From contig OZ286461.1 in NCBI GenBank assembly GCA_965644265.1, forward strand, positions 95,542,001 through 95,606,000: a stretch of 64,000 nt of DNA. The letters run 5' to 3'. This stretch comes from Glycera tridactyla (lineage: Eukaryota). The number at the start of each line of letters is the position of its first letter. Positions within the stretch are counted from its first letter, which is position 1. The position numbers and the translations under genes are program-made. The notes beneath the pieces were generated by a model. It did not search any database. It was not told where the DNA came from and saw only the letters and a list, made by a program, of their open reading frames with translations. This document shows positions 1,372 through 63,750 of the stretch, one piece after another.

Positions 1372-4300
1372 CTGAAAAGAAGAAAGCATACAAATGATCA
1401 AGATTGACCTTTGAGAGATAAGAATATTCATGTATTTCTTCGTGATATTTACCAGTTCACCAGTCCTAAAATATTGTGTTGACTGACCTCCAAACATCCA
1501 AATTCAGTACCACTGCAAATATTGATGGTATCAATACTTCATAATTCATATAGGTTTCTCACAGAGGTCACCTGCCTATGAGTGTAATTTTTTGTATGAA
1601 CAACAGTGTTATTTGAAGGCAGGTCTAACTGTATCAGGAATTATACTAGTGATTCAATGCGGATGATATTCATGATCACAAGTACTTCACCGCAATTGAA
1701 TGGCAACATGACGGCAACTTCTACGAAGCCCACAACACCAAGCTGCATATTGGCGTTTTATATACTCAGAATCAAAATGGAAATGGTTCTGCCCGAATCA
1801 TTACTGGTGTGACATGGTAATTTGCGGACAATAGTTGTCTCCGGCACTCATTGTCCGTGTATATAATTCACTGGACAGAAGAGCTGATGAAAGCATTTGC
1901 CTGGGAAATCAAGTAGTGGTGTAACGATGTACTGAAACTACTGTGGTCAGTGGGACAGAAGCCCAGACAACTCTTACATCATTTGTATCACAACATTATC
2001 ACATGCATGGTATGTTACAGCAGAACCTATGGCAAGAGACCCTCAGAAGAGAGACCAGCTCCAATGAGAGACCACTTTTCCATGGCATCTACCCTATTCA
2101 TCATAGTCTCTAATCAGATGTCTATTTGAAATTTTGAAATAGACCTCTCAGGAGCGAACCCCTTTTTCGAGAGACCACAATTTGGTGACATTTAAGGTGG
2201 CCTCTTATCAGAATTCATTATAAAGCAAGATAGTTTTACAATGGTTCCACAACACAATCACCATGTCCCACTTGATTGTCATATTATTTGAGTTCTTGAA
2301 GTTATGCTATTCAAATGTCATTCAACACAATTGAGTATGGTTCTGAAAACCACTAATTCTCACCTTTATACTTCAAATAAACCACCTAAACTAGGGCTCA
2401 CATTTTTCTTGGGCTATACAAATTGACAACAAATTGTTGATGATCATTCAAACATAACACTGATACATACATTAGGTTGTGTGGTGAAGTCACTGTCTGT
2501 TGCGGAGATATTGAAGACAACGGTGCCATATGGGGTAGTTTCATTTATCGTTATCATGTAGACCTCATTAGCAAAGACAGGTGGTTCGTTATTTCTCAAG
2601 ACAGAAATTTGGACATCAACTACAGCACTCTGCGGTGGAATTCCCATGTCTGTGGCAGTCACTCGCATCTGAAAAATGAAATTAATTGATAACTGCATTC
2701 CCTCATAAGTTGACTAAACTGCAGACTCCAAACTTTCAACATTGAGATATGATAAGCATAGGATAATTGTTGAAGAAAAAAGCACTATTCCCATGGAAAT
2801 TCCTCTAATCTTCCTGAAATCACATGATTGACCAGTTGAAAAAAGTGGGACTACTATTTTTTAGGTCAGATTTCATATACCCTTCCCCCTTCATCTCTTG
2901 AACTGTGGTTTACTGTCTGGGTTTTTTATACATTCATCAGACATAAACAAAGACAGTCTTCCAGACCTGGATAATATATAGTCCAGATCAAAGATTCATG
3001 TGTATGAACTGAACATTTTCCAGTTGCTATACCTCTACATAATTTAGTACCCATGCGAGTAAGCCATACGTAATTCTCAATCTCACCGACTGACACTGAC
3101 NNNNNNNNNNNNNNNNNNNNNNNNNNNNNNNNNNNNNNNNNNNNNNNNNNNNNNNNNNNNNNNNNNNNNNNNNNNNNNNNNNNNNNNNNNNNNNNNNNNN
3201 NNNNNNNNNNNNNNNNNNNNNNNNNNNNNNNNNNNNNNNNNNNNNNNNNNNNNNNNNNNNNATCTCACCTTGTATGTTTTGATGGGTGGCATTGGGTTGG
3301 GATCTGAAGAGAGGGAACCAGCAACAGAAATCCATCCATTTGTTGGACTAATCACAAAATAGGAGGTAGCATCCATCGTCGGTAGAACTCCTTCCATCTT
3401 GTATGTGATGACTCCACTTCCACTCTGCAATGGAAATAATGTTACATACTGTGTCAGATTGAAGTGTAGAGAAAAGCAATATCTTCACACTGACATCAAA
3501 ATAGTTCCAACCAGAATGGCAGGGATGATTTGGGTAGGGATTTCAGAAATATTAAATACATGTCTTGACATATCATTTTGATGTAGATAGCAACGCTTGA
3601 TGCACATATTGATGCACCAATTCATGCATCAGAGGGTCATGGTAATCATGCTAAAATTTTCACTGAAGTTCATTCAACAATTTCAAGAAGTCATCGGTGT
3701 ATACCATGTAACAAAAGAAGACACTTTGGACAAAATGGATCAACAGTTTTTAACTCCACAGAGCTGTCATCAATTCAGAGGCCATAGGTGCAAAATCAAC
3801 TAAGCAGTCTGATATGTTTATATAAAAAAGCTGTATAAATCAGGGAGTAAATTGAACACATTTATGAGATGCATCACAAGTAATATGACACACTACATAC
3901 CGTGCTAGGATCTTGATCAGATGCCAGAACATGCAGGACTGGGTACTGTATAGGTGTATACTCTCCAATGGTGACATTGTAGTAGTTCTGTCCAAAGACT
4001 GGACCATATGCATTGCGGATCACAGTGATCTTCAATTGACATAATGCTTTCTGCTGGGGATTACCATTGTCAGCAGCTTCTATTGTTAACTGAAAAAGAA
4101 ACAAAATATAAATAAAACATCTTGTTTTTCAGTGCATAAGGTTTAAGAAACAACATTATTTGCATTTATTTGCACATATTTGAGGACTAAAATATCATTG
4201 TTCTAAACAGTGAGCATGGTTTTTCATCAGGTGGGTGACCAACACGGACAACATTCAATATTTAATACCAGACTTGCAGCATCAATTCACGGCTACTACT

Positions 4301-6272
4301 CCAAAACATTGGTACTCCACCACTCTACTTCATCTTGGTGTGATTGGGTACTTGGCTTTGGGCAGTGATGGTGATTGTGGAGTACATGGCCCATGTAGTC
4401 AATGTTGTGTTCGTGCTTGTATACTCCCTAGGGGGATGAGAAAAGTTTGAGCTGAACAGGGCTGCTGTGGAACGTCAGGTGAGTTTTTCAAGGATGACAA
4501 TGACAATGACAATGTCAACTTCGACAATACCATGCATTGTAGCACTACATTTTTATATCTCTCAATTATGAAGTTTCTATCTTTCACTCAAACTAAGGCA
4601 TGTGATGCTCAGGTAGATATCCAGCATATACTCAAACTCAATCGCAAGATAACTCATATTGCACAGTGCTAAAAATGCTTCACACAGGATCATTTATGAC
4701 AACAAGACAACTCATCTCGACAGGATTGTGATATTGCTCTCAGATAAATACAAAAAGAGGATGGAGTGGGCAGGTGTAGAAATCAATGTGGGAGATAATT
4801 AGGAAGCAAGGAGAGAAGGATATTGTATCACTGAGATGAAATAATTTCAAACATGCCCCAACTATCCCCCATCCTGCAAAGGTCCAGGATATGACAGTGA
4901 CTATCGGCACCAGAAAGCACAGATTTGAATGGCTTCCAACAGGTATGAGGCAACCTCACCATTATCATTATACAAAATTCAGAACATATATTACTCATTT
5001 GAATGAAATGTATGATAAGGGACTGTCATAAAATTCACCAACAAGTGTTCTCCCCCGAGGAGACATCTCTCATAAAAGGTGTATTTTACCATGTCAAACA
5101 GCTTTCTTTAGTGATTGGGCATGCACTGGATCTTGTTCGGTTACTTGGGGACTACTGTATATACTCGCCTATAAGCCAAACCTGCGTATAAGCTGACCCC
5201 TTGATTTTGCCTCCAAAAGTTGGAATTTAGTCGATATCTCGCATATGAGTCGACCCCATAACTTTGCTGACTGAACATGGTGAATTGCAAATACCACCAT
5301 AATATATCAAAGAAAAGCCACCTTCCAACCATGGAGAGAAGCTGATCCTTCATAGCTCGAAACTTCAATGATTCATGGGATCAATTCATGAGGTGGTTCC
5401 CGCAAACAAAATTCATGTGTCAAAGGCAAATAATCCTGTATTTTGTGAAGAAAACGAAAAGCTGGCATCTTTAGTAGCAATTTGGGCGCCATTGCTGTGT
5501 CTTGTCATGAGGCGGGCATCCTGAGATGTACCACATACAGTCCAACCCATCCTAAGCAGCCACTATACTAAGCAGCCATTATACTAAGCAGCCACTATAC
5601 TAAGCAGCTACTATACTAAGCAGCCACCTGCCCTCGGCAGCCACTTTTGAATTTCCCACCGGCGGTTTTTGCACAATAATTCACCTGCCCCAGGCAGCCA
5701 CTTTTTGGCTTCCCGAACGGTGGATGCTTAGGACAGGTTTGACTGTATATAATGCTAATTGGTATTCTTGTTGTTGGTTCTTATCTGATTCTCCTTGAGG
5801 TCTGGTGGGGCCCAAGATGGCAGCACTCTCTTGGATGGTTATACCTGCTAAGTGTTTTCATCATGCCATGCTTTTCTCCAAAATGATCATCAGACACGCA
5901 AGTAGAATCACCATTTGTGCATTTGGTACTATTTATTGACATCTGGATGCATTCTGGCCAATTCAAGCTAGATTGGGAGTTTTGAAGAACATTGTTGTCA
6001 GCATCTGCCTTGATAATCCAGAAGCATGTCTCACGTGTAAGCTAACCCTCTTCGTTATGTCACAGAACTGGGCAGAAACTAAAAGAACTACAGAGACTCC
6101 TAATGTGATGATAGATGCATCCTGTCTGCTCCAATTTTAGACATAGCCCTCTACAATCATCAGCTGAGTATGGGCTTCCACGAAGAGAAGCTCGACAAGA
6201 AGAGGTTGTTTTTGTGGTAGTGATATTGTCAATCCGGCTCTCTCTCTCTCTCTCTCTCTCCCTCCCTCCCTC

Positions 6273-6308
<36 letters not shown>

Positions 6309-9300
6309 CGATAGTATCCAATAGCAAATGACCTGTACATTAATGACCTGCCTATGAAGGCCACTTTTTGATCCAAATTAAGATGGTCTTCAGCTTCAGA
6401 TTGCTGGTGGGCCCAGGCCCGTGGCCCACATTTTTGCTTTTTGGGCCCACTGATTTCAGCTTTTTTGTCCCTTCAGATCATTGATAAATAGTAAATGGCC
6501 CATCATTTTGAATTATGGCCCATGGTATTTCAATCTCAAGCTCTGATCTTCATAAGTAGGTTTTACTGTACACACATCCTTTTCTCAATTAATTCATGTA
6601 ATTGACAGAATATACAGGTAACAAGACCATGAAATATGCGCACACGCATACACTAACACAAATCTAGACGTGCATACACACACCCATCACCCCAACACAC
6701 GCATACTAATGCACACATATTCAAGCAAATCCTCACCTCATACTGAGTCTCAGTTCCTTGAGTAAGTTCATGAGCAATCGTCACACGTCCACTGCTGATG
6801 TCGACAGCAAAGTAGTAAACAGCTGTGACTGTTCCGACGACTTGATAGTACACCGAATCCTGAAATGTGAAATGTTGCCATGTTTCAACAAGAGCGCAAA
6901 GCTGCGCTGAGTGATCTCCGGTGAGAATTGGGGAATAGTAACAAGCCCTCCTTCTGGAAATGGCACCTTGAGTGTCTGTAAATTTCATAAATTTTCACCT
7001 TCCGTTTGAGACCCAGAAGGTGGAGGCTTGGAAGATCCCACCCATGCCAATTGCATGGGCATCACAATATAGCCCAGATGGTGCTGACATGATGTTAAAC
7101 CAGAATCAACCACAACCAACCACCTCTGGAATTTGGGGTAGCGATTCTCCTGGTGTGAGTTATGAGCGAGCCACCTTTGGATTTGTCTTATGGCCATGTT
7201 CCATCACAAACTGAAGCGTTCTTCGAATCGACGTCATTGGTGCGAGTGCTGATCTCTGATTGGCTGGTTTTACACACGCTATCTACAACTTCATTCATGA
7301 ATCGGCGCATTGATCTATGAAACCTGGTAATGAGGTGCGAAGAAGAAGCACTATTTCACTATCATATCAACCAAAACATGGATTTTTCTAGATTTATACA
7401 TGGAGGTAAGACAAATGGATGTCATGGAATGAAGAGACAGACAGAAAGACAGACAGAGCTACTTTCTATTCGCTTCATTCACATGACACGATTTGGCAAA
7501 AGTAGTCCCGGTTCCGAACATAATAGACATGTCAACATCGAAGTGGGCGTGGCCAAAGAGCTTGATTGACAGGCATTTACTACTTGTGCGTAGCCATACA
7601 TCTCTGAGCGATCGTACCTGTGTACTTCGGTGATCGGCCACAAAAACGAGTGTTGAGAGAATTTTGTATTGCGTAATCGGTACATTTCTTCGAATTGTCG
7701 TTCATCAGATCAATAAATCATCTTAAAATTGTGTTAGATTAGATCATTCGATCCTTTTACACAGATCCAATCAAGATTCGTTTGATTATATCAGCCTCGA
7801 GAGACAGGATCGGCGAAGTTAGAAAGTATTTCGAGCAGAGAGGTGGCAGCATAATGATCTCCAACGGAGATCACAAAAACAAATCGAGAATCGAGGTAAA
7901 TATCCGCTATGACCAAAATTCGCCTTCTTCTCGATCACCTCTCCCTCTCCAGCCCCATTCATACTAGTATTGATGAGAAAATCAGCCTACCGATTTAAGT
8001 ACAGTTGAGCCTACTCAAAGAGGCCAGATCCATACAAAGACCAACTGTCCACAAATGCCCCCCTGAGCTAACAGCAAGTGTATTTCCTACAGTGAATGAC
8101 CTCTCTCCAAAGACCACTTATTAATGCAACCAAGGGTGGACTTTGTGGACAGGTTGGACTTCACATATTTTGCCATTGGTTCAGTTGCCTGATCCCCTGC
8201 TATTCATCCATGTGAGGGATCATCTTGATGGGCAACAGATGCGTGATGAATGTTGGGGCAAATACATTGCATCCCAATAGACAAGAATGCACTATAATAG
8301 CATACTCACCCCATCACCATCTGAAGCTCTAACAGTCGCGATTTCTGATCCAAGTGGCTGATTCTCAGTGATAGTCAATGAGATCAGGTTCTCCTCAAAG
8401 ATAGGTGCATTCAGGTTTCGTCGCACTGTTACTCGGACTGTGGCCTGGTCATCAAGTGGTGGGTATCCTTTATCCTGAACGATAACCGATATCTAGAGAA
8501 AAGAAAATCCATAGAAATCAAGTCAAACTCTTACAAATGAGGTGATGAAACCATATCTTTCTGCCTATGACTTATATTACACCTTAATCAAAAGGAAAAA
8601 AACACATACAAATCATTCATTCCCTAGAAGACAAATATATATAAAGTCATACTTACGATGTATTCTGTTGCCTTGTCTGGATCATCACGGAGATTGGAAA
8701 CAACAGAGATGGCACCAGTGGTAGGCATAATGAAGAACCACATTCCAACGTCAGCGGGCACGGAGTCTGATGGGCTGATGGAGTACTGTAAGGTCCCACT
8801 CACACCCTGCACAACAGAACCATAACAATATATTGTGAGTGATGATTGAGGAAGAAAGTTTACTCAATGAATGCATTGGTTTCATAAATATTCTGAAACC
8901 CCTGGAAATGACGGGAAGTGGAGTGTATATTGGGAGCTGTCCTACTAGTTCACCCATCTTCAAGCAGCCCTGCTGGATGTTGGGTAACATTGCTCCTCAA
9001 TGTAAAACCGGACTGAATACATATATAACTCATCCGTCAACAGATGATCAGAGGACTTCCCTACCCTGCTTTATCATTCATTCCCTAGATCTGATTAGAC
9101 AATTAGCTTTTGGTATTGAGCATTTGTGGCTGTGACCGATTTTGTTGTTATTGGGAAGAGGCAGACTTGCACTTGGCCAAATGAAAGAAGTGTTGGGAGA
9201 AGGGGGTGGGTGGGCATATGAGCAAGAGTGAAGATGACACTGAGATCTTATGCAGAATTGCCAGAGTTGAACACATCATCCCTTATCTTTATCTCGGAGC

Positions 9301-9798: not shown

Positions 9799-9838
<40 letters not shown>

Positions 9839-12800: not shown

Positions 12801-12882
12801 ATGCTCACAAACCATGACCAAATGATTATTACTGTAACATGAAAAAATCTGCAAAATATGGACAATATTCTGCATCTCAACT

Positions 12883-12956
<74 letters not shown>

Positions 12957-13271: not shown

Positions 13272-13333
<62 letters not shown>

Positions 13334-58300: not shown

Positions 58301-61300
58301 TATTGAGACACCCATGAGACAGGAATGCATGCTCTCATTCAAGACTCCTCCTCCTCCTCCATCTCAGGTGAAATGATATGAAAATATTAGAAACTCAAAC
58401 TGCCTGTCCCAGGGTGGTCGAGTCCATCTAGTATTCAGGTTTTGTAGCTCAAGCTAGATATGGAACTATCATGGTGAAGTTTGTCCTTGGATGCTTACAG
58501 TGTAGACAGTCCTCCTGTCCTGCCTGAGGTCTCGGATCAAGGTGATTTCACCGGTAGATGAGTCTAATCCAAAGTAGGTTGGAGCTGGCACTAATCCAGA
58601 TGTCCCGTATACAACTCGTCCAGATAAATCTTCATCCTCCGCCGACACCTGCGAGTGATAGACAACCAAATATTCAGAAATATGTATCATGCAATTAAAT
58701 TTATTCTGAAATATAATGATAATAAGAAAAATACTAATCATAATCATGAGAGTGATGATAGTAACAACAGAATTAATAGAAATCCAGTTCTAAAATGAGA
58801 GCACAAATGAATACAAATGCCATGATTCGAAGATTGAACCTCCATGACGCCAAGTGACTCCCTTCTGCCCAGAAAATTATCAGTTGTGATAACACATCTG
58901 AATGGAACATTTAAAAGAAAAACTACATAGAAATTCATTATACGTCATTCAAATCAATGCTAAATGCATACACCCAGAAGAAAACCCATGACACCCCAGA
59001 CTCAAAAAGGACCTACCTGGTAGATGGAGCTTCCAACTGGTCTGAACTCCGAGATAGAGACTCCGTATGGCACATCGACAAATACTGGTGGGAAGTTCTC
59101 ACGGATGACCTCGACATAGGCCACCGCTGTATCACACTTCTGAGGTATGTTGTCATCACAAGCATCAACATTCAGCTGGAAACGAGCACACAAATATCAT
59201 GAATGTCATCATCTCCATGGCAGTATTGATGGATGGTAACAGCATAAACTTCTGCACAACGAAACATGTGAGTAACAACAAGATGTGTGTGTGGCTTGAA
59301 TTGTATGTGATATGCACTACTGACAGCAGTATGTTATCACATTCAAATCAAACAAATAACAACTCTTGCCAACAAGTTGGAATGAGAAGTTAAAGTGATT
59401 GATTTTTCGATGAATTTCGGTAATTTTATTTGGATTATACAAAATGTGTTAGAATGCCAACAAGCTTCCCGATATGAAATATCAAGAATGTATCATGAGG
59501 ACAATTTTTAGATGTCATCTGCTGAATAATGTCATTTTTTTTATTTGTTCATATATCATACAACATCCTCAGAATCCACTCTCATGTCATTTCCTCTTGT
59601 CAGGGTATAATGATTATCGATCACGTGAACTTACCGTGAATGTGTCATCGACAGTCTCCGAGAGAGGTTTCTTGAGGGAGACCAGACCATTATCAGGATT
59701 GACGTAGAAGACCTGCAGTGCACTGACACTACCGATCAACTCGTACATTACAGCATCCTGCAGAGCAAACAACAAATATTTAAGTCAACAATTCATCAAG
59801 ATATTGTGGTTTCCGCGACATTACTTGGCAATCAAAACATACGTGATGAGAGAAACAGGAGTGTGAAATATCCATCAGAGCTCAAAATGTGTCAATAGTA
59901 GTCATGTGTGAGTTGTTGTTTTATTTACAAAATAATAGACTTTGGCGAACACAACATAAATGTCCAGAAACAGGTAACACATATTAAAACATGTATGGAT
60001 ATGGGATTTCATTCAGTCAATCAGTACAGAACAGATCTGAGTGAAGTTGAAATCTTTGCATTGAACTATTGATAGTATATCATACGAAAAAAAATTGAAT
60101 ACATATTATAAACTGTATTACGATGTCATTCATTCAGATGATGATTGAATGGTGGGGAAATCTTTTGAATTCTGATTTTAGAAATGGAGGCAATTCCAAA
60201 TTCAATTTTTTGTGAGCATTGAACTCAAATATCATTGCGACTACCCATAAATCAAGTGTATTGTTGAGAAAATGGATGCATGTTAGACAAGCATTCACAG
60301 ATGGTAGAGCAGGAAACAAGCATGCCTTCCAGCCAGAAACTTGGCAAAGCACCACCAGAAGCATTCTTACCTCATCTTCATCAGTGGCTGTCAACTGCAG
60401 GACACTGGTTCCAAGTCGATGATTCTCAGTGATGGAGACTGTGTATTCTGGCTGGGAGAAGACTGGGGCCCATTGATTACGGATCACCATGATTGGTACT
60501 GTGGCTGTCGAGACTTGATCCAGGTAGGCCGTATCATACGCAATTATTCGTATCTGTCAACAGGAAGCAAGCTCTTCAAAAACACGATCAGGTAAATATC
60601 TCCAGACTCTCGAGAAGATTCACTTCACTCAGACGAGAGGAACAAATATCAACCCTGTCTACAAGACCCACGGCTGGTCACATTATAAAGTGGTCTTTGT
60701 TGGCAGGTGATCTTGGTTGAGATTACGTGGTGTCGAAAATACATTCACCATTCCAGGTGGTTTCTGTAGGCTGGTAGCTATTGAATAGAGGTGGTATTTG
60801 ACTCTACGTGCTCAGTCAGGACAAGCAAATGAGGGGTAGTTATTGTGTGGAAACATGACTTCACCAATGTTTCAGTAGAGCTGTATTATACCACCATATA
60901 TGGCATTGGTCAGTGAATGATCTTCCTCCCGCAGTCTCTGATTAGTGGAGATTTCTACCCATTTAACACATTTCTGTGGATTTTATCTAACTCACCGTGT
61001 AAAATGATGATTTGAGGTTGTCTGTTTTGAGGTCAGTCATGACACTAATGGCTCCGGATGTCTCGTGAATAGAGAAGAAACTCGGGGACGGATAGTCTCC
61101 AGTAATTTCGAACTTCAGCTCTTCCATCAGATCAGGGTCATGGGCTCGGACCTCAAATATTTCAGAACCAACTGGCAGTGTTTCTGAAATTCGCTGAACA
61201 TTGTATGGTTCACCATCGAAGCGTGGTGCCCGGGTGCTTCTCTCTACTGTGATGTAGATGGTCATCATTGCTACACGTTCTGGAGTTCCCTCGTCACTTG

Positions 61301-63750
61301 CTTCCATCTCCAGCTGAAACAGAGAGGAAATTGTTGAGTGATTGAGTGGGGCTTCGACATTTCTTCAACCAAGCCAAAATTATTTGAGGCTGAACTCATG
61401 GTCGGCTCTAAAATATTTGGCATATACATATAATTGACTGAAATGGAAGTAGGAAGTTTTTTGGGTACTTTTTTTTTCTCAATTTTTCTGCATGGGAACA
61501 ACTATTGGCTCACTCCTGCCAGGCAAGAGCAGCAGGGAGTTCAGGTCAATGTACAAAGAAAGGTTTCATAAAATCCCGCCCACGTAGCCTTCATGTCAAG
61601 TGTATCAAATATTATCAGGAATTGCATTTCACAAAACGGTAATGATCATAAGCAAACATTAAGGTGAAATAACAGAGTAGAATGAGGTCTCAATATCAAC
61701 AGAAATAGGTAGAAAAGATTCCTTTCAATCGAGATTATCATGAGCAACTTGAACTATTGGAAGGATACAGACAAATGTCTATGGGTAGACCTTCTGTGTG
61801 TATTGATTCCACCGAAACAAACACTAATGTTTGCCTAATTTGAATCGTCATGGAAAAAAACTGACATTTTCCATATTTGACACATTGCAAATTCACACTC
61901 TTCAAACATGAAAAGCACTTTCATTCCAATTGTACCAAATATGAAACTGGCAACTATATGCTGGATATGTTATCAATGCCTCGATTGTTGCCATCTACCG
62001 CAGTTACACTATGTTTATGTTTTTTGGGGATCGACGATTCTAAAAAAGTAGGACACTCACAGTGTATTCAAGTGTTGTTCCTGGATACAGCATCTTCTTG
62101 ACTGTGACTGTACCAGTATCAGGATCGACGTTGAAGAATTCCATTGCTATAGTGTCCCCAATGGCTCGATATATGACACGATCCTACAAACAATATCACA
62201 CCATGCATTCAATCAACTTGGCAGAGACCACCTCACCAGCCAGTAAAACCTCACATGGTCACCATGGTGGGCCAGGAGGCCTATTGCTAAAACATAGATG
62301 CATCAGACATCTTGCTGCTGAACTCAATTTTCCTCGCACCATTTTGAGTCACATGATGAAGCTCCAAAATTTCAGGAAACAAATATCACCTTTCAAAAAT
62401 CATCTCATTTGGAAATCTTTGAATTCAAATTCTTCAACTTTTCTTTGAAATAAATTTGGCGAAAGTGTGTAAATTCACAATTACTTTCACCATGACAGTT
62501 GAACTTCCTAGAGGAATGTCTCTATGCAAAGCCCACCAGTCTATAATAGCCATCCATGTGGCAAAAGCAATAGTAGATGCATTTTTGCTGTGACTGTCAC
62601 CTTCACAAAGGTCTTCCTGTATATCCAACACACACCATGATGAGGGGTGTTACCGGAAATCCAACCAATGCCTCTCCACCAATCAAATATTCACCAACGT
62701 CCATCTTATGATGCCTGAACTTGTTTTCTCTAAATAGATAGATTTGTAACATTCTTAAATCACTCTCACATTCAATGAATATAAGCAGTCATCCTGATAT
62801 GATGTGAAGATTATTAATTCTGTCAGAGTTCTTTCAGAGGATTTGAGATGAAATTTGGGACTGTAGCTCAAACTCACCCCATCTGCGTCAGTGGCTCGTG
62901 GTTCGTCGGTGACAATATGACCGAGTGGTACGGTCTCCTTGATGGTGACACGCAGGGGTCCTTCATTGGCCCAGACTGGTCTGTTCTCATTCCTCTGCAT
63001 CTGGACCTCCACGGTAGCTGTGGCTGTCTGCTCAGGATAGATGTCATCGTAGGCAAGTACCCTTATCTGGATGAAATAAAGTACATTGTGAGGAACATTG
63101 ACCAGAAGGATGAAGAGGTTAGAGAGTGTCACTTGATGGTGCATGAGTCAAACACCATAGATTCAATCACTATCACGCTTACTCTTGCTATATTTCAATG
63201 GGGCATTTATTTGTCATACATAGACCGAATATCCATTGGAAAATCAAGAAAAAGAATGGATGTTTAAATCACATAAGATGAGTTTCAGATATTTTTGCAA
63301 AGTAGAATCTTAAGGCTGGATATTGAATGTAAACAGAGTAGTAGTTCTGTAGACATCTGACAGAAACTGACTCCACCATTTAAGAAATTACGGCACAATC
63401 ATTCCATCAGAATCGAAAATCAGAAGTTTATAGCAATCATGATATTTCAAGATGTCAGACCATTGGCAGTATATTTATTTTTAAAAATGTAGATAATGAT
63501 TAAATTTCTGAAAAGAATCTTTCAATTTGAGGTATAATGAAAATGAATTTGAAATATGTTCCTACAGCATGCTAGTAGAAGTTAGCAGCTAACAAGCCAC
63601 TTGCTGATGATGTTTGCTGGTACTTACCATGTAGGAGAAGGCATGGTCGGTCTTCAGATCATTCTGGACGGTGATGAGACCACTCATGTCATCAACATGG
63701 AAGAAGTACGGAGATGGGAAGTCCCCGATCAGCTGATACTTGATGGTACC
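1231..63750 (-). CDS. Giant atypical cadherin-repeat protein, internal part only (57 exons, 3086 aa, ~29.5 repeats); both ends outside window
   Basis: 57 GT-AG exons, all phase 0, give one open frame. Recurrent cadherin-fold motifs: PxF...Y.v.i.E, A.DxD, Y.i.G..F.i...G.i, Y.l.v.A.D.g.P. No signal peptide, TM, EGF/LamG or cytoplasmic domain visible, so orthology is not assigned. Confidence 0.95.
1550..1631. mobile_element. Partial CAGT-TIR MITE
   Basis: Ends caggtctaactg+TA; internal aggtcacctgcctat as in full copies. Confidence 0.5.
2018..2200. mobile_element. Partial CAGT-TIR-type MITE
   Basis: TA+cagcagaacct start, repeated gagacc subterminal motifs; other TIR not seen. Confidence 0.5.
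2471..2668 (-). CDS. cadherin exon e56 (type B)
   Basis: 198 nt, cag|...|gtatg; MRVTATDMGIPP...LRNNEPP...ATDSDFTTQPN. Confidence 0.92.
3101..3261. other. Assembly gap (161 N) in intron e55-e56
   Basis: Run of N ending 7 nt from the e55 donor. Confidence 1.
3269..3424 (-). CDS. cadherin exon e55 (type A, long)
   Basis: 156 nt, cag|...|gtgag; SGSGVITYKMEGVLPTMDATSYFVISPTNG...KTYK. Confidence 0.9.
3901..4089 (-). CDS. cadherin exon e54 (type B)
   Basis: 189 nt, cag|...|gtatg; LTIEAADNGNPQQ...IRNAYGP...ASDQDPST. Confidence 0.93.
5155..5257 (+). mobile_element. Tc2/pogo-type TIR end fragment
   Basis: TA+ctgtatatactcgcctataagcc...gtataagctgacccc resembles the CCGTATATACTCG..TATAAG terminus of Tc2/pogo non-autonomous elements (from memory); no partner TIR seen. 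Confidence 0.5.
5538..5745. mobile_element. CAGT-TIR MITE with internal 16-bp tandem repeat, nested in an older repeat
   Basis: TA|cagtccaaccc...caggtttgactg|TA; about 5 copies of ctaagcagccactata. Confidence 0.8.
6238..6306. repeat. (TC)n microsatellite
   Basis: Direct reading. Confidence 0.97.
6320..6568. mobile_element. Partial CAGT-TIR MITE interrupted by a ggccc-rich ~150-bp insert (6391-6545)
   Basis: Ends taggttttactg+TA; insert has imperfect inverted ends agctt.agatt / aatctcaagct. Confidence 0.45.
6737..6859 (-). CDS. cadherin exon e53 (type A)
   Basis: 123 nt, cag|...|gtgag; DSVYYQVVGTVTAVYYFAVDISSGRVTIAHELTQGTETQYE. Confidence 0.92.
7030..7124 (+). mobile_element. SINE-like 3' fragment with (AACC)n-type tail; copies at 30210-30256 (+), 57514-57600 (-), 58256-58316 (-)
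   Basis: Core caatata.cccagatggtgct is shared by three copies and more degenerate in the fourth, each followed by an aacc-rich tail; SINE identity is inferred. Confidence 0.65.
8002..8160. mobile_element. CAGT-TIR MITE, opposite orientation to the 26747 and 38713 copies
   Basis: TA|cagttgagcct...caggttggact; internal cctgagct..cagtgaatgacctctc is the reverse complement of gagaggtcatttactg..agctcagg. Confidence 0.7.
8310..8492 (-). CDS. cadherin exon e52 (type B)
   Basis: 183 nt, tag|...|gtgag; ISVIVQDKGYPP...RRNLNAP...ASDGDG; not in ORF track. Confidence 0.92.
8657..8806 (-). CDS. cadherin exon e51 (type A, long)
   Basis: 150 nt, cag|...|gtaag; GVSGTLQYSISPSDSVPADVGMWFFIMPTTG...TEYI. Confidence 0.92.
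9334..9516 (-). CDS. cadherin exon e50 (type B)
   Basis: 183 nt, tag|...|gtaaa; IRVVAYDSCNPIQ...VRNENQP...ATDADQ; not in ORF track. Confidence 0.92.
9798..9859. repeat. (GT)n microsatellite
   Basis: Direct reading. Confidence 0.97.
10073..10195 (-). CDS. cadherin exon e49 (type A)
   Basis: 123 nt, cag|...|gtgag; CDIKYDITGDGLSTTLFEVDENNGRITLAQLFTVDIGTLYV. Confidence 0.92.
11082..11270 (-). CDS. cadherin exon e48 (type B)
   Basis: 189 nt, tag|...|gtgag; LVIQASDQGIPPK...TTDQNYP...QATFAGETD. Confidence 0.91.
12885..12955. repeat. (CA)n microsatellite
   Basis: Direct reading. Confidence 0.98.
13130..13432. repeat. Compound (CTGT)n/(CT)n microsatellite
   Basis: Direct reading; source of several spurious ORFs. 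Confidence 0.95.
17445..17620. repeat. Degenerate ~32-bp tandem repeat (5-6 units)
   Basis: Recurrent ttc/tttcaat....caatgtagaaaaa unit. Confidence 0.65.
18818..18949 (-). CDS. cadherin exon e47 (type A, long)
   Basis: 132 nt, tag|...|gtgag; GLNSLVNYTLIGEDLALNLFSIDPWTG...SQTYG; acceptor chosen because it keeps frame. Confidence 0.87.
19575..19763 (-). CDS. cadherin exon e46 (type B)
   Basis: 189 nt, tag|...|gtatg; LRILARDQGTPQQ...QRNTYAP...AEDQDPP. Confidence 0.93.
20189..20326 (-). CDS. cadherin exon e45 (type A, long)
   Basis: 138 nt, cag|...|gtgag; GPKSQITYDIAGDASAPNYFFIHPSNG...TQQYQ. Confidence 0.93.
20745..20930 (-). CDS. cadherin exon e44 (type B)
   Basis: 186 nt, cag|...|gtgag; LLVVVWDTGNPEM...RRNEYVP...ATDNDLP. 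Confidence 0.93.
21568..21690 (-). CDS. cadherin exon e43 (type A)
   Basis: 123 nt, cag|...|gtaag; GSLMYEIRGVAPGSNYFYIDGDTGYLYVKQPLDTTTDTTYT. Confidence 0.92.
22212..22400 (-). CDS. cadherin exon e42 (type B)
   Basis: 189 nt, tag|...|gtttg; FGVVATDNHGNNSR...SRDQQPP...ATDPDMQ. Confidence 0.91.
23078..23200 (-). CDS. cadherin exon e41 (type A)
   Basis: 123 nt, cag|...|gtgag; DIVRYDFIEVNEITEFFYLNPDDGIVALRRSLEDSSLPMYT. Confidence 0.93.
23329..23498. mobile_element. ~170-bp imperfect palindrome centred on GGCC-GTA-GGCC
   Basis: Left arm tgata..atcaagaattccccgagtgcc..gagcgtacatg pairs with right arm catgtacgctc..ggcacgaggggattctgat..tatca. Confidence 0.8.
24383..24565 (-). CDS. cadherin exon e40 (type B)
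   Basis: 183 nt, cag|...|gtaag; VRVQAYDSLFPNN...IRNPNAP...EAEDDDG. Confidence 0.93.
24935..25063 (-). CDS. cadherin exon e39 (type A)
   Basis: 129 nt, cag|...|gtgag; GVMMYSIVGMYPAESFFYVNSTTG...DSLASTQYT. Confidence 0.93.
25199..25384 (-). CDS. cadherin exon e38 (type B)
   Basis: 186 nt, aag|...|gtaag; ILVKASDSLEED...ARDENPP...ATDVDLS. Confidence 0.9.
25746..25901. mobile_element. CAGT-TIR MITE
   Basis: TA|cagtaacacctg...caggttttactg|TA; internal direct repeat ggccagattttt..cttttcactg. Confidence 0.75.
26085..26207 (-). CDS. cadherin exon e37 (type A)
   Basis: 123 nt, cag|...|gtaag; DTIYYEIIGGETAMTYFYINPTTGALSLKRTVQDDTNTQYS. Confidence 0.92.
26747..26923. mobile_element. CAGT-TIR MITE (Tc1/mariner-pogo type), near-identical to 38713-38889
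   Basis: TA|cagtcaaacctg...ccggttcgactg|TA; repeated ggtggtc..tatag subterminal motifs. Confidence 0.88.
27079..27261 (-). CDS. cadherin exon e36 (type B)
   Basis: 183 nt, cag|...|gtatg; INLQAYDSATPGV...ARNANRP...ATDADE. Confidence 0.93.
27810..28077. repeat. (GAGT)n microsatellite tract ending 17 nt from the e35 donor
   Basis: Direct reading. Confidence 0.95.
28095..28223 (-). CDS. cadherin exon e35 (type A)
   Basis: 129 nt, tag|...|gtatg; GQLTYKIVGQYPAPDFF...RDLQLDSLQLGAYT. Confidence 0.92.
28445..28633 (-). CDS. cadherin exon e34 (type B)
   Basis: 189 nt, tag|...|gtaag; CTVQAGDDGYPEER...QRDIQLP...EATLPVVV. Confidence 0.91.
29379..29501 (-). CDS. cadherin exon e33 (type A)
   Basis: 123 nt, cag|...|gtggg; DELQYELIEDEACQEYFYMNPQSGGISLKKLLSDTSITFFQ. 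Confidence 0.92.
30257..30439 (-). CDS. cadherin exon e32 (type B)
   Basis: 183 nt, tag|...|gtttg (weak donor); LRIGLYDSSSPEQ...NRNEFSP...ATDQDQ. Confidence 0.9.
30598..30720 (-). CDS. cadherin exon e31 (type A)
   Basis: 123 nt, cag|...|gtgag; GTLTFEVEGIAPAPEYFAIHPTEGTVWVIKNLKDDRTLTYT. Confidence 0.92.
31137..31322 (-). CDS. cadherin exon e30 (type B)
   Basis: 186 nt, cag|...|gtaag; MSVKAYDHGNPVK...QRNEFPP...ASDQDLQ. Confidence 0.93.
31827..31955 (-). CDS. cadherin exon e29 (type A)
   Basis: 129 nt, tag|...|gtatg; DQMRYELFDAADSGSLEFFFIDEDVGSIMLKRSLTEGAGTAYQ. Confidence 0.92.
32534..32716 (-). CDS. cadherin exon e28 (type B)
   Basis: 183 nt, cag|...|gtgag; LQVEVYDTAYPNN...NRNAYAP...AADNDG. 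Confidence 0.93.
33088..33216 (-). CDS. cadherin exon e27 (type A)
   Basis: 129 nt, cag|...|gtaag; GSLIFKLTGIYPAETFFRIDNRTG...DSLQSLTYT. Confidence 0.93.
33382..33545. mobile_element. ~164-bp imperfect palindrome centred on GGCC-TAC-GGCC
   Basis: Left arm gttata..agca.gactatatg..ataccaaac..tgaatttc..gtcac pairs with the right arm ending catatagtcgtgctataac. Confidence 0.85.
33846..34031 (-). CDS. cadherin exon e26 (type B)
   Basis: 186 nt, cag|...|gtaag; VQVRVSDQSEPEQ...QRDQYLP...AVDSDQT. Confidence 0.93.
34806..34928 (-). CDS. cadherin exon e25 (type A)
   Basis: 123 nt, cag|...|gtagg; DQLRYQIIGDDIAKQFFYMNPLSGVITLKQLLTTDSQTQYT. Confidence 0.92.
35480..35662 (-). CDS. cadherin exon e24 (type B)
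   Basis: 183 nt, cag|...|gtgag; LRIVAYDSSNPNQ...LRNENAP...ASDADG. Confidence 0.93.
36058..36180 (-). CDS. cadherin exon e23 (type A)
   Basis: 123 nt, cag|...|gtaag; GTMTYGVIGDMPAPTLFGINEATGRLYVNSDLKADNEFTYT. Confidence 0.93.
36847..37038 (-). CDS. cadherin exon e22 (type B)
   Basis: 192 nt, cag|...|gtatg; LLVQASDNREPER...TRDESAP...AYDQDIQ. Confidence 0.93.
37201..37420. repeat. (ATC/ATT)n low-complexity tract
   Basis: Direct reading. Confidence 0.85.
37445..37567 (-). CDS. cadherin exon e21 (type A)
   Basis: 123 nt, tag|...|gttgg; DQVNYRLLGPDDAMTFFYINPLNGQLSVTSPLTQSTEAEYQ. Confidence 0.9.
38203..38505 (-). CDS. cadherin exon e20 (fused A+B)
   Basis: 303 nt, tag|...|gtaag; GVLTYEVVGD...ETFYV-LRVQVYDSANP...QRNVNGP...AIDLDG. 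Confidence 0.93.
38713..38889. mobile_element. CAGT-TIR MITE
   Basis: TA|cagtcaaacct...caggttcgactg|TA; extra TIR end caggttcgactgta at ~38930-38943. Confidence 0.88.
39229..39431. repeat. 18-bp minisatellite, 11 full copies (aattgctgacatgtgtct)
   Basis: Units start every 18 nt from 39229; only single-base variants. Confidence 0.97.
39659..39847 (-). CDS. cadherin exon e19 (type B)
   Basis: 189 nt, cag|...|gtaag; FTVRARDQSDPEK...VRDQYPP...ASDQDLK. Confidence 0.93.
40484..40618 (-). CDS. cadherin exon e18 (type A)
   Basis: 135 nt, cag|...|gtgag; NDTLLYEIVAEETGDSSMYYFWLNPTTG...ESRFM. Confidence 0.9.
41041..41223 (-). CDS. cadherin exon e17 (type B)
   Basis: 183 nt, cag|...|gtgag; LRVAAYDSANPAQ...SRNEYGP...ATDRDV. 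Confidence 0.93.
41840..41968 (-). CDS. cadherin exon e16 (type A)
   Basis: 129 nt, cag|...|gtgag; GEIQYEAIGLYPAQNFFAVERNSGIVRINGTIKNDPLRLPSYT. Confidence 0.92.
42558..42740 (-). CDS. cadherin exon e15 (type B)
   Basis: 183 nt, cag|...|gtaag; LTIMASDGRGR...TLDEQPP...AIDPDLR. Confidence 0.93.
43324..43449 (-). CDS. cadherin exon e14 (type A)
   Basis: 126 nt, cag|...|gtcag; DEIRYSMVNATNQGNLFFLLEEVTGNVRLIKPLTSGTSQEYL. Confidence 0.92.
44169..44357 (-). CDS. cadherin exon e13 (type B)
   Basis: 189 nt, cag|...|gtgag; LTLIAYDSAYPEV...ARNIHGP...ATDSDAQ. Confidence 0.93.
44581..44665. repeat. (GT)n degenerate microsatellite
   Basis: Direct reading. Confidence 0.9.
44762..44896 (-). CDS. cadherin exon e12 (type A)
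   Basis: 135 nt, cag|...|gtcag; GEIVYSIIGVYPSQSFF...RDLTLDSLQLGSYE. Confidence 0.92.
47535..47895. repeat. Degenerate 70-100-bp tandem repeat containing CCAAT boxes
   Basis: aatgagaactgcttt.tcattggctgatattcagt recurs; ATTGG at ~47559, 47629, 47808, 47882. Confidence 0.75.
50437..50625 (-). CDS. cadherin exon e11 (type B)
   Basis: 189 nt, tag|...|gtaag; LTVEASDQALPNER...PRDSTPP...AVDDSRV. Confidence 0.93.
51716..51838 (-). CDS. cadherin exon e10 (type A)
   Basis: 123 nt, tag|...|gtaag; DTIKYSLLGDDVALEFFYINPTTGQISLKKLLTEGSDPTYT. Confidence 0.92.
52415..52541. mobile_element. CAGT-TIR-type MITE
   Basis: TA|tagtgaaacctg...caggtttcactg|TA. Confidence 0.75.
54200..54420 (+). pseudogene. Possible highly decayed LINE reverse-transcriptase fragment
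   Basis: Across stops and frameshifts: NFLYR...LG.FL/INGDL...KYHDD...QLQENIDVLNR..F..VRC, loosely like FL..R / LF..YINDL / FADD / LQ.D.D.L..W / F...KC. Confidence 0.3.
55761..55897. mobile_element. CAGT-TIR MITE, internally deleted
   Basis: cagtcaaacctgtc...gagcaggttcgact; same family as 26747 and 38713. Confidence 0.8.
56134..57166. repeat. Two diverged ~210-bp direct repeats (56134-56342, 56951-57166), each with a hairpin, flanking an AG-rich tract (56361-56520)
   Basis: gagaat.ttatatcaca...tgtgatataaa..tctc inverted ends in both; shared flank agataccatgatca.cgtg...agccttcaaga.taaacagt. Confidence 0.75.
57819..58001 (-). CDS. cadherin exon e9 (type B)
   Basis: 183 nt, cag|...|gtaag; LRVTAVDDAEPGR...QRNANAP...ATDGDG. 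Confidence 0.93.
58201..58244. mobile_element. 44-bp minimal CAGT-TIR element
   Basis: TA|cagtgaaacctgt-18 nt-acaggtttcactg|TA; perfect 13-bp TIR. Confidence 0.85.
58499..58648 (-). CDS. cadherin exon e8 (extended type A)
   Basis: 150 nt, cag|...|gtaag; VSAEDEDLS-GRVVYGTSGLVPAPTYFGLDSSTG...RTVYT. Confidence 0.92.
59017..59175 (-). CDS. cadherin exon e7 (shortened type B)
   Basis: 159 nt, cag|...|gtagg; LNVDACDDNIPQKCDTAV...IRENFPP...SSIYQ; ends 9 codons early. Confidence 0.92.
59635..59757 (-). CDS. cadherin exon e6 (type A)
   Basis: 123 nt, cag|...|gtaag; DAVMYELIGSVSALQVFYVNPDNGLVSLKKPLSETVDDTFT. Confidence 0.92.
60371..60553 (-). CDS. cadherin exon e5 (type B)
   Basis: 183 nt, cag|...|gtaag; IRIIAYDTAYLDQ...IRNQWAP...ATDEDE. 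Confidence 0.93.
60650..60805. mobile_element. Degenerate CAGT-TIR MITE
   Basis: aaccctgtctacaagacc..ggtcacat..aaagtggtcttt..ggcaggtg matches the 26747 copy. Confidence 0.6.
60996..61313 (-). CDS. cadherin exon e4 (fused B+A)
   Basis: 318 nt, cag|...|gtgag; LEMEASDEGTPER...HDPDLM-EELKFEITGDYPSPSFF...SFYT. Confidence 0.93.
62061..62183 (-). CDS. cadherin exon e3 (type A, D-class)
   Basis: 123 nt, tag|...|gtgag; DRVIYRAIGDTIAMEFFNVDPDTGTVTVKKMLYPGTTLEYT; not in ORF track. Confidence 0.92.
62878..63066 (-). CDS. cadherin exon e2 (type B, AYD-class)
   Basis: 189 nt, cag|...|gtgag; IRVLAYDDIYPEQ...QRNENRP...ATDADG. Confidence 0.93.
63628..63750 (-). CDS. cadherin exon e1 (type A, G-class)
   Basis: 123 nt, cag|...|gtaag; GTIKYQLIGDFPSPYFFHVDDMSGLITVQNDLKTDHAFSYM. 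Confidence 0.93.

What the first reader, a model, noticed from the sequence alone, without database searches (positions are those of the whole stretch)
2471..63066. Every inter-domain linker lacks the canonical Ca2+ motif; a conserved Arg replaces it
Seen: the 29 linkers read e.g. QRNENRP, PRDSTPP, SRNEYGP, QRDIQLP, IRNAYGP. None has Asp at position 1 or 4 of DxNDNxP, 27 have Arg at position 2, and no A exon contains LDRE/LDYE. Position-3 N/D, DxD and the AxD Asp are mostly kept. Established: in E-cadherin EC1-2, Ca sites 1 and 2 need DRE and the two linker Asp residues, while site 3 uses the linker Asn, DxD and AxD. Inference: this is a one-Ca (site 3 only) or Arg-stabilised cadherin rod whose mechanics differ from classical, Fat or Dachsous cadherins.
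Basis: partly seen in the sequence, partly recalled or inferred. Interest (0 to 1): 0.75.

Follow-up and report, generated by a model that had tools for sequence, protein, structure and literature searches.

The report
Giant cadherin with arginine linkers
This stretch is the middle of a transcribed gene for a giant cell-surface cadherin, of a family seen in molluscs, a brachiopod and a ribbon worm, in which almost every joint between repeats has lost the residues for two of the three usual calcium sites and carries a conserved arginine instead; I found no description of this way to build a long cadherin rod.

Summary
The minus strand carries 57 phase-0 exons (3,086 codons) of one cadherin gene that runs off both window ends. 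Spliced transcript contigs and a 59%-identical orthologue confirm the exon model. The N gap lies in an intron.

Of the 29 linkers, 27 read xR[N/D/S/E]xxxP. None has Asp at position 1 or 4, and there is no D[RYF]E motif. The site-3 ligands are kept: N/D 27/29, DxD 26/29, XDX Asp 29/29.

New here:
- The Arg is conserved 27/27 in the orthologue.
- It defines a family of 32 giant cadherins, auto-named "Fat 4-like". Arg occupies about 90% of 862 stalk linkers, against 1.5% in canonical motifs.
- The family linker is one residue shorter, which puts Arg in the strand register of the first Asp.
- Arg co-varies with the XEX Glu and the DRE-position acid, but not with site-3 ligands.
- Relatives have a canonical N-terminal tip, then the Arg-type stalk, then a CDH23/PCDH15-type MAD domain, a membrane helix and a short tail. 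They have no EGF or LamG domains, so they are not Fat cadherins.

The reading "one Ca2+ plus an Arg salt bridge" is plausible but unproven, because no model coordinates were available. The scan noted the same motif in the adjacent upstream window of this gene (s1-340422).

The parts
1231..63750 (-). Part of one giant cadherin gene: 57 phase-0 exons, 3,086 codons, about 29 EC repeats. It runs off both window ends.
   Evidence: splice sites; spliced transcript contigs; colinear orthologue P0158
63628..63750 (-). B exon (middle of an EC)
62878..63066 (-). A exon, linker 1 QRNENRP
62061..62183 (-). B exon
60996..61313 (-). Fused A+B exon, linker 2 ERSTRAP
60371..60553 (-). A exon, linker 3 IRNQWAP
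59635..59757 (-). B exon
59017..59175 (-). A exon, linker 4 IRENFPP; it ends before the DxD, which sits in the next exon
58499..58648 (-). B exon that starts with the DxD (AEDED)
57819..58001 (-). A exon, linker 5 QRNANAP
51716..51838 (-). B exon, after a 6-kb intron
   Evidence: colinear with P0158
50437..50625 (-). A exon, linker 6 PRDSTPP; donor moved 3 nt after comparison with the orthologue
44762..44896 (-). B exon, after a 5.5-kb intron
44169..44357 (-). A exon, linker 7 ARNIHGP
43324..43449 (-). B exon
42558..42740 (-). A exon, linker 8 TLDEQPP with no Arg; the orthologue has TRDEQPP
41840..41968 (-). B exon
41041..41223 (-). A exon, linker 9 SRNEYGP; donor moved 3 nt
40484..40618 (-). 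B exon
39659..39847 (-). A exon, linker 10 VRDQYPP
38203..38505 (-). Fused B+A exon, linker 11 QRNVNGP; Pfam Cadherin hit
37445..37567 (-). B exon
36847..37038 (-). A exon, linker 12 TRDESAP
36058..36180 (-). B exon
35480..35662 (-). A exon, linker 13 LRNENAP
34806..34928 (-). B exon
33846..34031 (-). A exon, linker 14 QRDQYLP
   Evidence: in transcript contigs
33088..33216 (-). B exon
32534..32716 (-). A exon, linker 15 NRNAYAP
31827..31955 (-). B exon
31137..31322 (-). A exon, linker 16 QRNEFPP
30598..30720 (-). B exon
30257..30439 (-). A exon, linker 17 NRNEFSP
29379..29501 (-). B exon
28445..28633 (-). A exon, linker 18 QRDIQLP. The next EC has no DxD (ATLPVVV) and the previous EC has Ala at XEX, so this joint probably binds no Ca2+. 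The exon end was set by the transcript contigs.
28095..28223 (-). B exon
27079..27261 (-). A exon, linker 19 ARNANRP
26085..26207 (-). B exon
25199..25384 (-). A exon, linker 20 ARDENPP; AAG acceptor
24935..25063 (-). B exon
24383..24565 (-). A exon, linker 21 IRNPNAP
23078..23200 (-). B exon
22212..22400 (-). A exon, linker 22 SRDQQPP
21568..21690 (-). B exon
20745..20930 (-). A exon, linker 23 RRNEYVP
20189..20326 (-). B exon
19575..19763 (-). A exon, linker 24 QRNTYAP
18818..18949 (-). B exon
11082..11270 (-). A exon after a 7.5-kb intron, linker 25 TTDQNYP with no Arg (orthologue TTDQNFP); the next EC has no DxD (ATFAGETD)
10073..10195 (-). B exon; donor moved 3 nt
9334..9516 (-). A exon, linker 26 VRNENQP
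8657..8806 (-). B exon
8310..8492 (-). A exon, linker 27 RRNLNAP
6737..6859 (-). B exon
3901..4089 (-). A exon, linker 28 IRNAYGP
3269..3424 (-). B exon; its donor gtgagat (3268-3262) abuts the N run
3101..3261 (.). Assembly gap inside the intron between exons 3424-3269 and 2668-2471
   Evidence: orthologue contiguous across the junction
2471..2668 (-). A exon, linker 29 LRNNEPP
1231..1371 (-). B exon; the gene continues beyond the window start

Best explanation
The window encodes about 29 repeats of the stalk of a very long type-I membrane cadherin. It belongs to a previously uncharacterised family found in Mollusca, Brachiopoda and Nemertea.

In the stalk, the canonical joint V-x-D-x-N-D-N-x-P is replaced by a joint one residue shorter, V-x-R-[N/D]-x-x-x-P, and DRE is reduced to x-x-D.

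Shown: the gene is real, spliced and transcribed. The Arg, the Asn/Asp and the Pro are under strong purifying selection. All side-chain ligands of Ca2+ site 3 are kept. Three of the five acidic side chains that make sites 1 and 2 are gone.

Inferred: each joint binds one Ca2+, at site 3. The Arg guanidinium follows strand G in the register of the lost first Asp. It points into the former site-1/2 pocket and pairs with the retained XEX Glu and the DRE-position Asp. A built-in positive charge would then stand in for two Ca2+ ions and hold the joint together.

The result would be a rod of 60 or more repeats whose stiffness depends on far less bound calcium. By analogy with relatives, it would carry a canonical Ca2+-binding tip at its far end and a MAD domain at the membrane.
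For: Gene and expression:
- 57 exons, all phase 0 with AG/GT splice sites.
- Transcript contigs from four runs of one study, the longest 22,735 nt, join ten exons at the predicted sites.
- Orthologue P0158 is 59.4% identical and colinear over 3,070 residues.

Cadherin fold:
- Pfam PF00028 hits.
- PDB matches to CELSR1, CDH23 and protocadherins, with alignments that map R-N onto x-N of DxNDN and x-x-D onto D-R-E.
- AlphaFold model of three Patella repeats: pLDDT 94.6, pTM 0.75.

Conservation:
- Identity to the orthologue per heptad position is 13, 28, 28, 18, 20, 18 and 29 of 29. Arg is conserved in 27/27 linkers.
- In 32 family members, position 2 is Arg in 772 of 862 stalk linkers; K or H accounts for 37 of the other 90.
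- Position 2 is Arg in 1.5% of 2,667 canonical motifs.
- The Arg fraction per protein is bimodal: 0.49-1.0 in the family, at most 0.19 in all other giant cadherins retrieved.

Shorter linker: the spacing from the last core Val to the Pro is 6 residues in 81% of family linkers and 7 in 82% of canonical linkers.

Coupling:
- With Arg present, XEX is Glu in 66% of linkers; without it, 34% (p = 1.5e-8).
- The DRE-position acid is present in 63% against 30% (p = 3e-9).
- XDX Asp (92% against 94%) and DxD (95% against 92%) do not depend on Arg.
- XEX is itself Arg or Lys more often when position 2 is not basic: 7/71 against 17/772 (p = 0.002).

Precedent for a site-3-only joint: PCDH15 EC5-6 (PMC7547225).
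Against: - No coordinates, ion-binding data or mutants are available. The Arg side chain may point to solvent, as the residue at position 2 of DxNDN does in classical cadherins (my own knowledge of E-cadherin structures).
- The covariation counts treat duplicated repeats as independent, so the p-values are inflated. The per-protein sign test is only 20 to 8 (p = 0.036).
- Glu sits at position 4 in 10 of 29 linkers here and in many of the orthologue's. Together with XEX Glu and the second DxD Asp it could keep a second Ca2+ site.
- The only solved site-3-only linker, PCDH15 EC5-6, is flexible rather than stiff (PMC7547225).
- AlphaFold's confident inter-domain geometry may simply copy canonical cadherins. 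The global Foldseek TM-scores of 0.45-0.54 say nothing about bending.
Confidence: 0.55

Rival explanations
1. Two-calcium joints. Sites 2 and 3 are both occupied. Site 2 is built from the XEX Glu, the DRE-position Asp, the second DxD Asp, a backbone carbonyl and, where present, Glu at position 4. The Arg only balances charge at the rim or stabilises the shortened loop.
For: - XEX Glu/Asp is kept in 25/29 domains and the DRE-position Asp in about half.
- Glu sits at position 4 in 10/29 linkers.
- PCDH15 EC2-3 and EC3-4, which have altered DRE/DXNDN motifs, still bind two Ca2+ at sites 2 and 3 (PMC7547225).
- Rough charge count: about 5 acids against 2 Ca2+ plus 1 Arg (inference).
Against: - Both linker Asps that coordinate site 2 in canonical cadherins are missing everywhere.
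- Across the family, position 4 is acidic in only about 11% of linkers.
- A positive side chain beside a Ca2+ site would lower its affinity.
- The Arg tracks the presence of the acids, as expected of a partner rather than a bystander.
Confidence: 0.2
2. Flexible, largely calcium-independent hinges. The joints are loose, as in PCDH15 EC5-6 or Ca2+-free linkers. The Arg is conserved for another reason, such as cis or trans contacts between rods, binding of an anionic partner (for example sulfated glycans), or folding of the shortened loop.
For: - The one solved site-3-only linker adopts several orientations (PMC7547225).
- Arg is surface-prone.
- The family is a long repetitive stalk where lateral packing could matter (inference).
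- Two joints in this window also lack DxD.
Against: - The site-3 ligands are as conserved as in canonical cadherins, 92-97%.
- Arg co-varies with two buried-pocket acids of the same joint and not with other positions.
- AlphaFold gives pTM 0.75 for a three-repeat piece, though this is weak evidence.
Confidence: 0.2
3. Not a functional gene: a decayed cadherin array whose calcium motifs have drifted.
For: Loss of canonical motifs and a very large repetitive locus.
Against: - 3,086 codons without a stop, and 57 good splice-site pairs.
- Spliced transcripts.
- Colinear orthologue with selective conservation of R, N/D and P.
- The same motif in three phyla.
Confidence: 0.01

Closest known systems
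Protocadherin-15 EC5-6 linker (site-3-only, 'partial calcium-free' linkers of PCDH15)
   Same: DRE is absent and both linker Asps are absent (PPNNQ), while DXD and XDX are kept. One Ca2+ is seen, at site 3 (PMC7547225).
   Different: In PCDH15 this is a single joint in an otherwise canonical protein. Its XEX is degraded too, it has no conserved Arg, and the joint is flexible. Here the pattern is the rule for dozens of joints, with a fixed motif, a one-residue deletion and a retained XEX Glu.
Cadherin-23 / protocadherin-15 / CDHR2 (long cadherins with a membrane-adjacent domain)
   Same: The layout of relatives and of the orthologue is a long EC array, then a ferredoxin-like MAD directly before the membrane helix, then a short tail. 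The top nine PDB fold matches of the juxtamembrane domain are CDH23 MAD28 and PCDH15 MAD12 (TMq 0.61-0.71). MADs are described in 10.1101/460097.
   Different: CDH23 and PCDH15 have mostly canonical three-Ca2+ linkers and 27 or 11 repeats. This family has up to about 58 repeats with Arg-type joints. Its tail shows no Pfam or PDB match. Molluscs also have a separate 'cadherin-23-like' protein with no elevated Arg fraction (P0217).
Fat / Fat4 / Dachsous atypical cadherins (the automatic name of all family members)
   Same: Very many EC repeats, and some linkers without calcium motifs.
   Different: Fat proteins carry EGF and laminin-G domains after the EC array; their precomputed Pfam lists include PF00008, PF02210 and PF00054. 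Family members have none. Arg at the linker is at most 0.19 per protein in the Fat-like hits. Their linker spacing is 7 residues, not 6.
Ca2+-free linkers of Drosophila N-cadherin EC2-3 and PCDH15 EC9-10
   Same: Non-canonical joints inside a cadherin ectodomain.
   Different: Those joints lack all motifs, are bent, and are said to share no common sequence motif (PMC5120219). The joints here keep the site-3 ligands and share a strict motif.

Membership tests
Cadherin superfamily (EC repeat, PF00028) | Sequence match to the EC repeat profile | tested here: met
   Window exon 38505-38203 scores 30.2 bits against PF00028 (cut-off 28.8). Phmmer to PDB gives CELSR1 at 2.6e-47, plus CDH23 and protocadherins. 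Relatives score 943-955 bits.
Cadherin superfamily (EC repeat, PF00028) | Seven-strand beta-sandwich fold in tandem | tested here: met
   AlphaFold of three repeats of relative P0007 gives pLDDT 94.6. All top Foldseek PDB matches are multi-EC cadherin fragments, E down to 9e-24. This was tested on a relative, not on the window protein.
Canonical three-Ca2+ EC linker | DXNDN linker with Asp at positions 1 and 4 | tested here: not met
   0 of 29 linkers; there is no D.ND[NH].P in the model.
Canonical three-Ca2+ EC linker | D(R/Y)(D/E) motif | tested here: not met
   No D[RYF]E anywhere in the model. The first Asp is present in 1 of 30 domains. The last position is Asp in 18 of 30.
Canonical three-Ca2+ EC linker | XEX, DXD and XDX motifs | tested here: met
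   XEX is E/D in 25/29 domains, DxD is intact in 26/29 and the XDX Asp is present in 29/29.
Canonical three-Ca2+ EC linker | Three bound Ca2+ ions | not testable with these tools
   Needs a structure or calorimetry.
Fat / Fat-like cadherins | EGF and laminin-G domains between the EC array and the membrane | tested here: not met
   Absent from P0007 and P0020 and from the precomputed Pfam lists of all family members, but present in true Fat proteins. The window itself does not reach the C-terminus.
CDH23/PCDH15-type (MAD-bearing) cadherins | Ferredoxin-like membrane-adjacent domain directly before the membrane helix | tested here: met
   Juxtamembrane region of orthologue P0158: pLDDT 82.7. The best nine PDB matches are CDH23 MAD28 and PCDH15 MAD12. 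A hydrophobic membrane helix follows. Tested in the orthologue; this part lies outside the window.
CDH23/PCDH15-type (MAD-bearing) cadherins | Orthology to CDH23 or PCDH15 (tip sequence, tail motifs, handshake partner) | not tested
   The tail has no Pfam or PDB match. Language-model neighbours are Cad87A, Cad89D, PCDH15 and CDHR2 clusters, which is only a lead.

The most novel reading that the evidence does not exclude
A whole cadherin family has swapped metal for side chain. In each of 30 to 60 or more joints, an arginine that entered through a one-residue deletion sits where Ca2+ ions 1 and 2 sit in all studied cadherins. It is clamped by the old calcium ligands (XEX Glu and the DRE-position Asp), and only site 3 still binds Ca2+. 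This would be a new, genetically encoded way to stiffen a cadherin rod about 300 nm long, independent of most of the calcium, conserved since before molluscs, brachiopods and nemerteans split.
Probability: 0.45. Interest if true: 0.75.

Novelty: new variant of a known kind. Interest (0 to 1): 0.6.

Why it matters
Cadherin mechanics are thought to rest on three Ca2+ ions per joint. Non-canonical joints are known only as isolated exceptions, and they are said to share no common motif (PMC5120219).

Here there is a conserved motif, used for nearly every stalk joint in proteins of up to about 58 repeats, across three phyla. It comes with a plausible built-in substitute for two of the ions.

If the Arg does fill the pocket, three things follow:
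- It gives a natural test of how much of a cadherin's stiffness and strength comes from sites 1 and 2.
- It gives a template for designing calcium-independent cadherin rods.
- It marks a family that current genome annotation wrongly calls 'Fat 4-like'.

Tried and rejected
- Word-index protein search with a single fused exon found only two fragments, because of its length filter.
- The same tool with the C-terminal part of the Lingula protein found only two further proteins.
- Pfam and PDB sequence searches of the juxtamembrane and tail region gave nothing. Only the fold search identified the MAD.
- Global Foldseek scores of the three-repeat model (TM 0.45-0.54, rmsd 7-9 A) cannot tell straight joints from bent ones.
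- No tool returns model coordinates, so I could not measure Arg-Glu distances.
- Literature searches for an Arg- or Lys-substituted cadherin calcium site, and for lophotrochozoan giant cadherins, found nothing relevant. Two key papers, Jin 2012 and Jaiganesh 2018, are not held.
- I considered a non-cadherin 'cadherin-like' family (CSPG, bacterial Cadherin_4) and rejected it: the best matches are PF00028 and animal cadherins.
- I considered a pseudogene and rejected it.
- I considered membership of Fat and rejected it.
- I cannot claim that the family is absent outside Lophotrochozoa. Only the best 150 and 120 hits were visible.
Full report
**1. What is in the window**

The window has one run of N, at 3101-3261. 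Six-frame reading shows open pieces with cadherin-like motifs only on the minus strand, about every 1-1.5 kb. A small profile of the mid-domain pieces found the remaining exons.

All pieces can be bounded by in-frame AG acceptors and GT donors. The result is 57 phase-0 exons from 63750 down to 1231, 3,086 codons without a stop.

Exons alternate between two kinds:
- 'A' exons hold the end of one EC repeat, the linker, and the start of the next repeat up to the DxD.
- 'B' exons hold the middle of a repeat.

Two introns are missing, giving fused exons at 61313-60996 and 38505-38203. These fused exons confirm how A and B parts join.

**2. Is the model real?**

Four runs of one study hold spliced contigs, the longest 22,735 nt. 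They join the ten exons between 28095 and 34032 at my predicted sites. The skipped parts end CT..AC on the plus strand, which is GT..AG on the gene's strand. The contigs corrected one donor, from 28454 to 28445.

A protein from a JGI contig, P0158, has 4,813 residues on a 14.5-kb contig and so looks transcript-like. It is 59.4% identical and colinear with the model over 3,070 residues. The largest indel is 5 residues. It also corrected three donors by one codon each. The long introns therefore hide no exons.

The gene runs off both ends of the window. The transcript contig extends about 12 kb upstream of exon 34031 and 9 kb downstream of exon 28095. This implies a protein of well over 6,000 residues if most of the contig is coding (inference).

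**3. The assembly gap**

The B exon ends at 3269. Its donor gtgagat occupies 3268-3262, the N run follows, and the next A exon is 2668-2471. P0158 residues 4125 and 4126 align to the two sides of this junction without a break. The gap is therefore intronic, and both flanking exons are phase 0. I filled in nothing.

**4. The observation**

The 29 linkers are listed and aligned.
- Arg is at heptad position 2 in 27 linkers. The exceptions are TLDEQPP and TTDQNYP.
- Asp at position 1 or 4 occurs in none.
- Position 3 is N in 18, D in 9, S in 1 and E in 1.
- Pro at position 7 occurs in 29.

In the alignment, the XDX Asp and the linker Pro are the only invariant columns. Arg is among the two nearly invariant columns.

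DxD is intact in 26 of 29 repeats, and XEX is Glu in 21 and Asp in 4. No D[RYF]E and no D.ND[NH].P occurs anywhere.

HMMER alignments to CELSR1 repeats map q-R-N-v-N-g-P onto s-D-T-N-D-H-s-P, and l-q-n-D onto L-D-R-E. So the first DRE Asp is lost and the Glu has become Asp, in about every second repeat.

- The DRE position is in the B exons, not the A exons.
- Ten linkers have Glu at position 4.
- The XEX Glu is retained.
- The linker is shorter than canonical (section 6).

**5. A family, not a single oddity**

I searched a profile of the 29 A exons against 1.84 billion representative proteins. The best 150 hits are giant cadherins. I counted linker residues in them.
- Ten proteins have Arg at position 2 in 49-93% of linkers and almost no DRE.
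- The other 140 have at most 19% and have canonical DRE.
- In those 140, position 2 of 2,667 DxND[NH]xP motifs is Arg in 41, or 1.5%.

The ten come from Haliotis, Patella, Potamilus, Lingula and Tubulanus, plus two unnamed entries. All named entries but the Potamilus one (a 'hypothetical protein') are called 'protocadherin Fat 1/4-like'.

A word-index search with the Patella protein added 22 more members. They come from Gigantopelta, Saccostrea, Elysia, Babylonia, Batillaria, Tegillarca, Aplysia, Sinanodonta, Solemya, Mytilus, Littorina, Biomphalaria, Mya, further Haliotis species and a second Lingula entry. Their Arg fraction is 0.51-1.0. The 94 other proteins in that list have at most 0.12.

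The family is thus sharply delimited and spans Mollusca, Brachiopoda and Nemertea. I cannot say that it is absent elsewhere.

**6. A shorter linker**

The spacing from the last core Val of strand G to the linker Pro is:
- 6 residues in 173 of 213 family linkers (81%);
- 7 residues in 2,561 of 3,127 canonical linkers (82%).

The XDX Asp to Pro spacing differs in the same way, 22 against 23 residues.

HMMER places the extra canonical residue at the first Asp. Written from the strand, the change is V-x-D-x-N-D-N-x-P to V-x-R-N-x-x-x-P.

Counted forward from the strand, it stands in the register of the first Asp, whose carboxylate points into the calcium pocket in classical cadherins (my own knowledge of E-cadherin structures).

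It remains an inference.

**7. Selection on the Arg**

Against orthologue P0158, where overall identity is 59%, the seven linker positions are identical in 13, 28, 28, 18, 20, 18 and 29 of 29 linkers.
- Arg is kept in 27 of 27.
- TLDEQPP is TRDEQPP in the orthologue.
- TTDQNYP lacks Arg in both.

**8. Coupling**

I analysed 862 stalk linkers from 32 proteins. Position 2 is R in 772, K in 19 and H in 18.

| Feature | Arg present | Arg absent | p |
|---|---|---|---|
| XEX is Glu | 66% | 34% | 1.5e-8 |
| Acid at last DRE position | 63% | 30% | 3e-9 |
| XDX Asp | 92% | 94% | not significant |
| DxD of the next repeat | 95% | 92% | not significant |

When position 2 is not basic, XEX itself is Arg or Lys in 7 of 71 linkers. 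When position 2 is Arg, it is so in 17 of 772 (p = 0.002).

Repeats are related by duplication, so these p-values overstate the case. The per-protein sign test is 20 to 8, p = 0.036.

The direction is what one expects if the Arg pairs with the two old site-1/2 ligands and site 3 works on its own.

**9. How it probably works**

In PCDH15 EC5-6, DRE is IVG and the linker is PPNNQ, while DXD and XDX are kept. That joint binds one Ca2+, at site 3, and adopts several orientations (PMC7547225).

The joints here have the same losses. In addition they have a conserved basic residue, a retained XEX Glu and a one-residue deletion.

My best reading (confidence 0.55) is one Ca2+ at site 3 plus an Arg-carboxylate clamp in place of sites 1 and 2.

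The main rivals are:
- two Ca2+, at sites 2 and 3, helped by Glu at position 4 in a third of the linkers here;
- loose hinges in which the Arg serves another purpose.

AlphaFold folds three Patella repeats with pLDDT 94.6 and pTM 0.75. It models no ions, and I had no coordinates. The PDB comparison confirms only the fold.

**10. Architecture of the family**

Full-length relatives with signal peptides (Solemya, Tegillarca, Potamilus; the Aplysia entry is partial and lacks one) begin with several repeats that carry canonical DxNDNxP linkers (2-4 per protein) and LD[RYF]E motifs. The Arg-type joints start only after residue 400-1,150.

After the last repeat comes a conserved region of about 130 residues, then a hydrophobic helix, then a short tail with conserved motifs.

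[quoted passage not shown] Its nine best PDB matches are CDH23 MAD28 and PCDH15 MAD12, with TMq 0.61-0.71 and E from 4e-7 to 7e-4. MADs are described in 10.1101/460097.

No EGF or laminin-G domains occur. The family is therefore not Fat-like. Its layout is that of CDH23, PCDH15 and CDHR2: a canonical tip, a long stalk, a MAD, a membrane helix and a tail. Language-model neighbours agree (Cad87A, Cad89D, PCDH15 and CDHR2 clusters), but that is only a lead.

The window shows only stalk.

**11. Novelty and verdict**

I found no paper that describes this family or an Arg-type cadherin joint. The library is incomplete, and two relevant papers were not held.

I class the finding as a new variant of a known kind. 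It is a real, expressed cadherin, but with a family-wide alternative joint.

Its interpretation is partly supported. The mechanics remain to be measured.

The scan noted the same motif in the adjacent upstream window of this gene (s1-340422), so the two findings are one.

Noticed in passing
window 63750-1231, whole array: Two repeat types alternate. One ends A-Y-D-S-x-x-P and is followed by an R-N linker, with D at the DRE position. The other ends A-S-D-x-G-x-P and is followed by an R-D linker. Together they form a 2-repeat, 4-exon super-unit. The same Y/T-S alternation is seen in the Patella, Lingula and Haliotis relatives.
   Followed up: partly
window 28633-28445 and 11270-11082: Two joints lack even the site-3 DxD of the following repeat (ATLPVVV and ATFAGETD). 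The first also has Ala at XEX in the preceding repeat, and the second has no Arg. These may be truly calcium-free hinges, seven repeats apart.
   Followed up: partly
window 33250-33650: An intronic stretch is covered at about 9,000-fold summed contig depth in the RNA runs, with many loose ends. It is probably an abundant expressed repeat or mobile element.
   Followed up: no
window 12700-13500 and 9750-9950, 44560-44790: Microsatellites in introns: (CA)n runs and an (ACAG)n-type array that reads as long TDRQ-repeat open frames on the minus strand. Their long ORFs in the mechanical ORF list look like repeat artefacts rather than genes.
   Followed up: no
window 57819-51838, 50437-44896, 18818-11270: Three introns of 5.5-7.5 kb stand among introns of about 0.2-2.6 kb. 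The orthologue shows that no exon is missing in them.
   Followed up: yes
relatives P0158, P0020, P0015, P0091, P0007 (C-termini): A conserved cytoplasmic tail (E-x-Q-S-L-x-M-F/Y-V-P-P-D-E ... L-G-E-V-N-L ... I-N-P-x-Y) has no Pfam or PDB match. It may be a docking motif.
   Followed up: partly
relatives P0004-P0174: Nearly every named member of this family is called 'protocadherin Fat 1/3/4(-like)' in public records (the others are hypothetical proteins), yet none has EGF or laminin-G domains. The names are misleading.
   Followed up: yes
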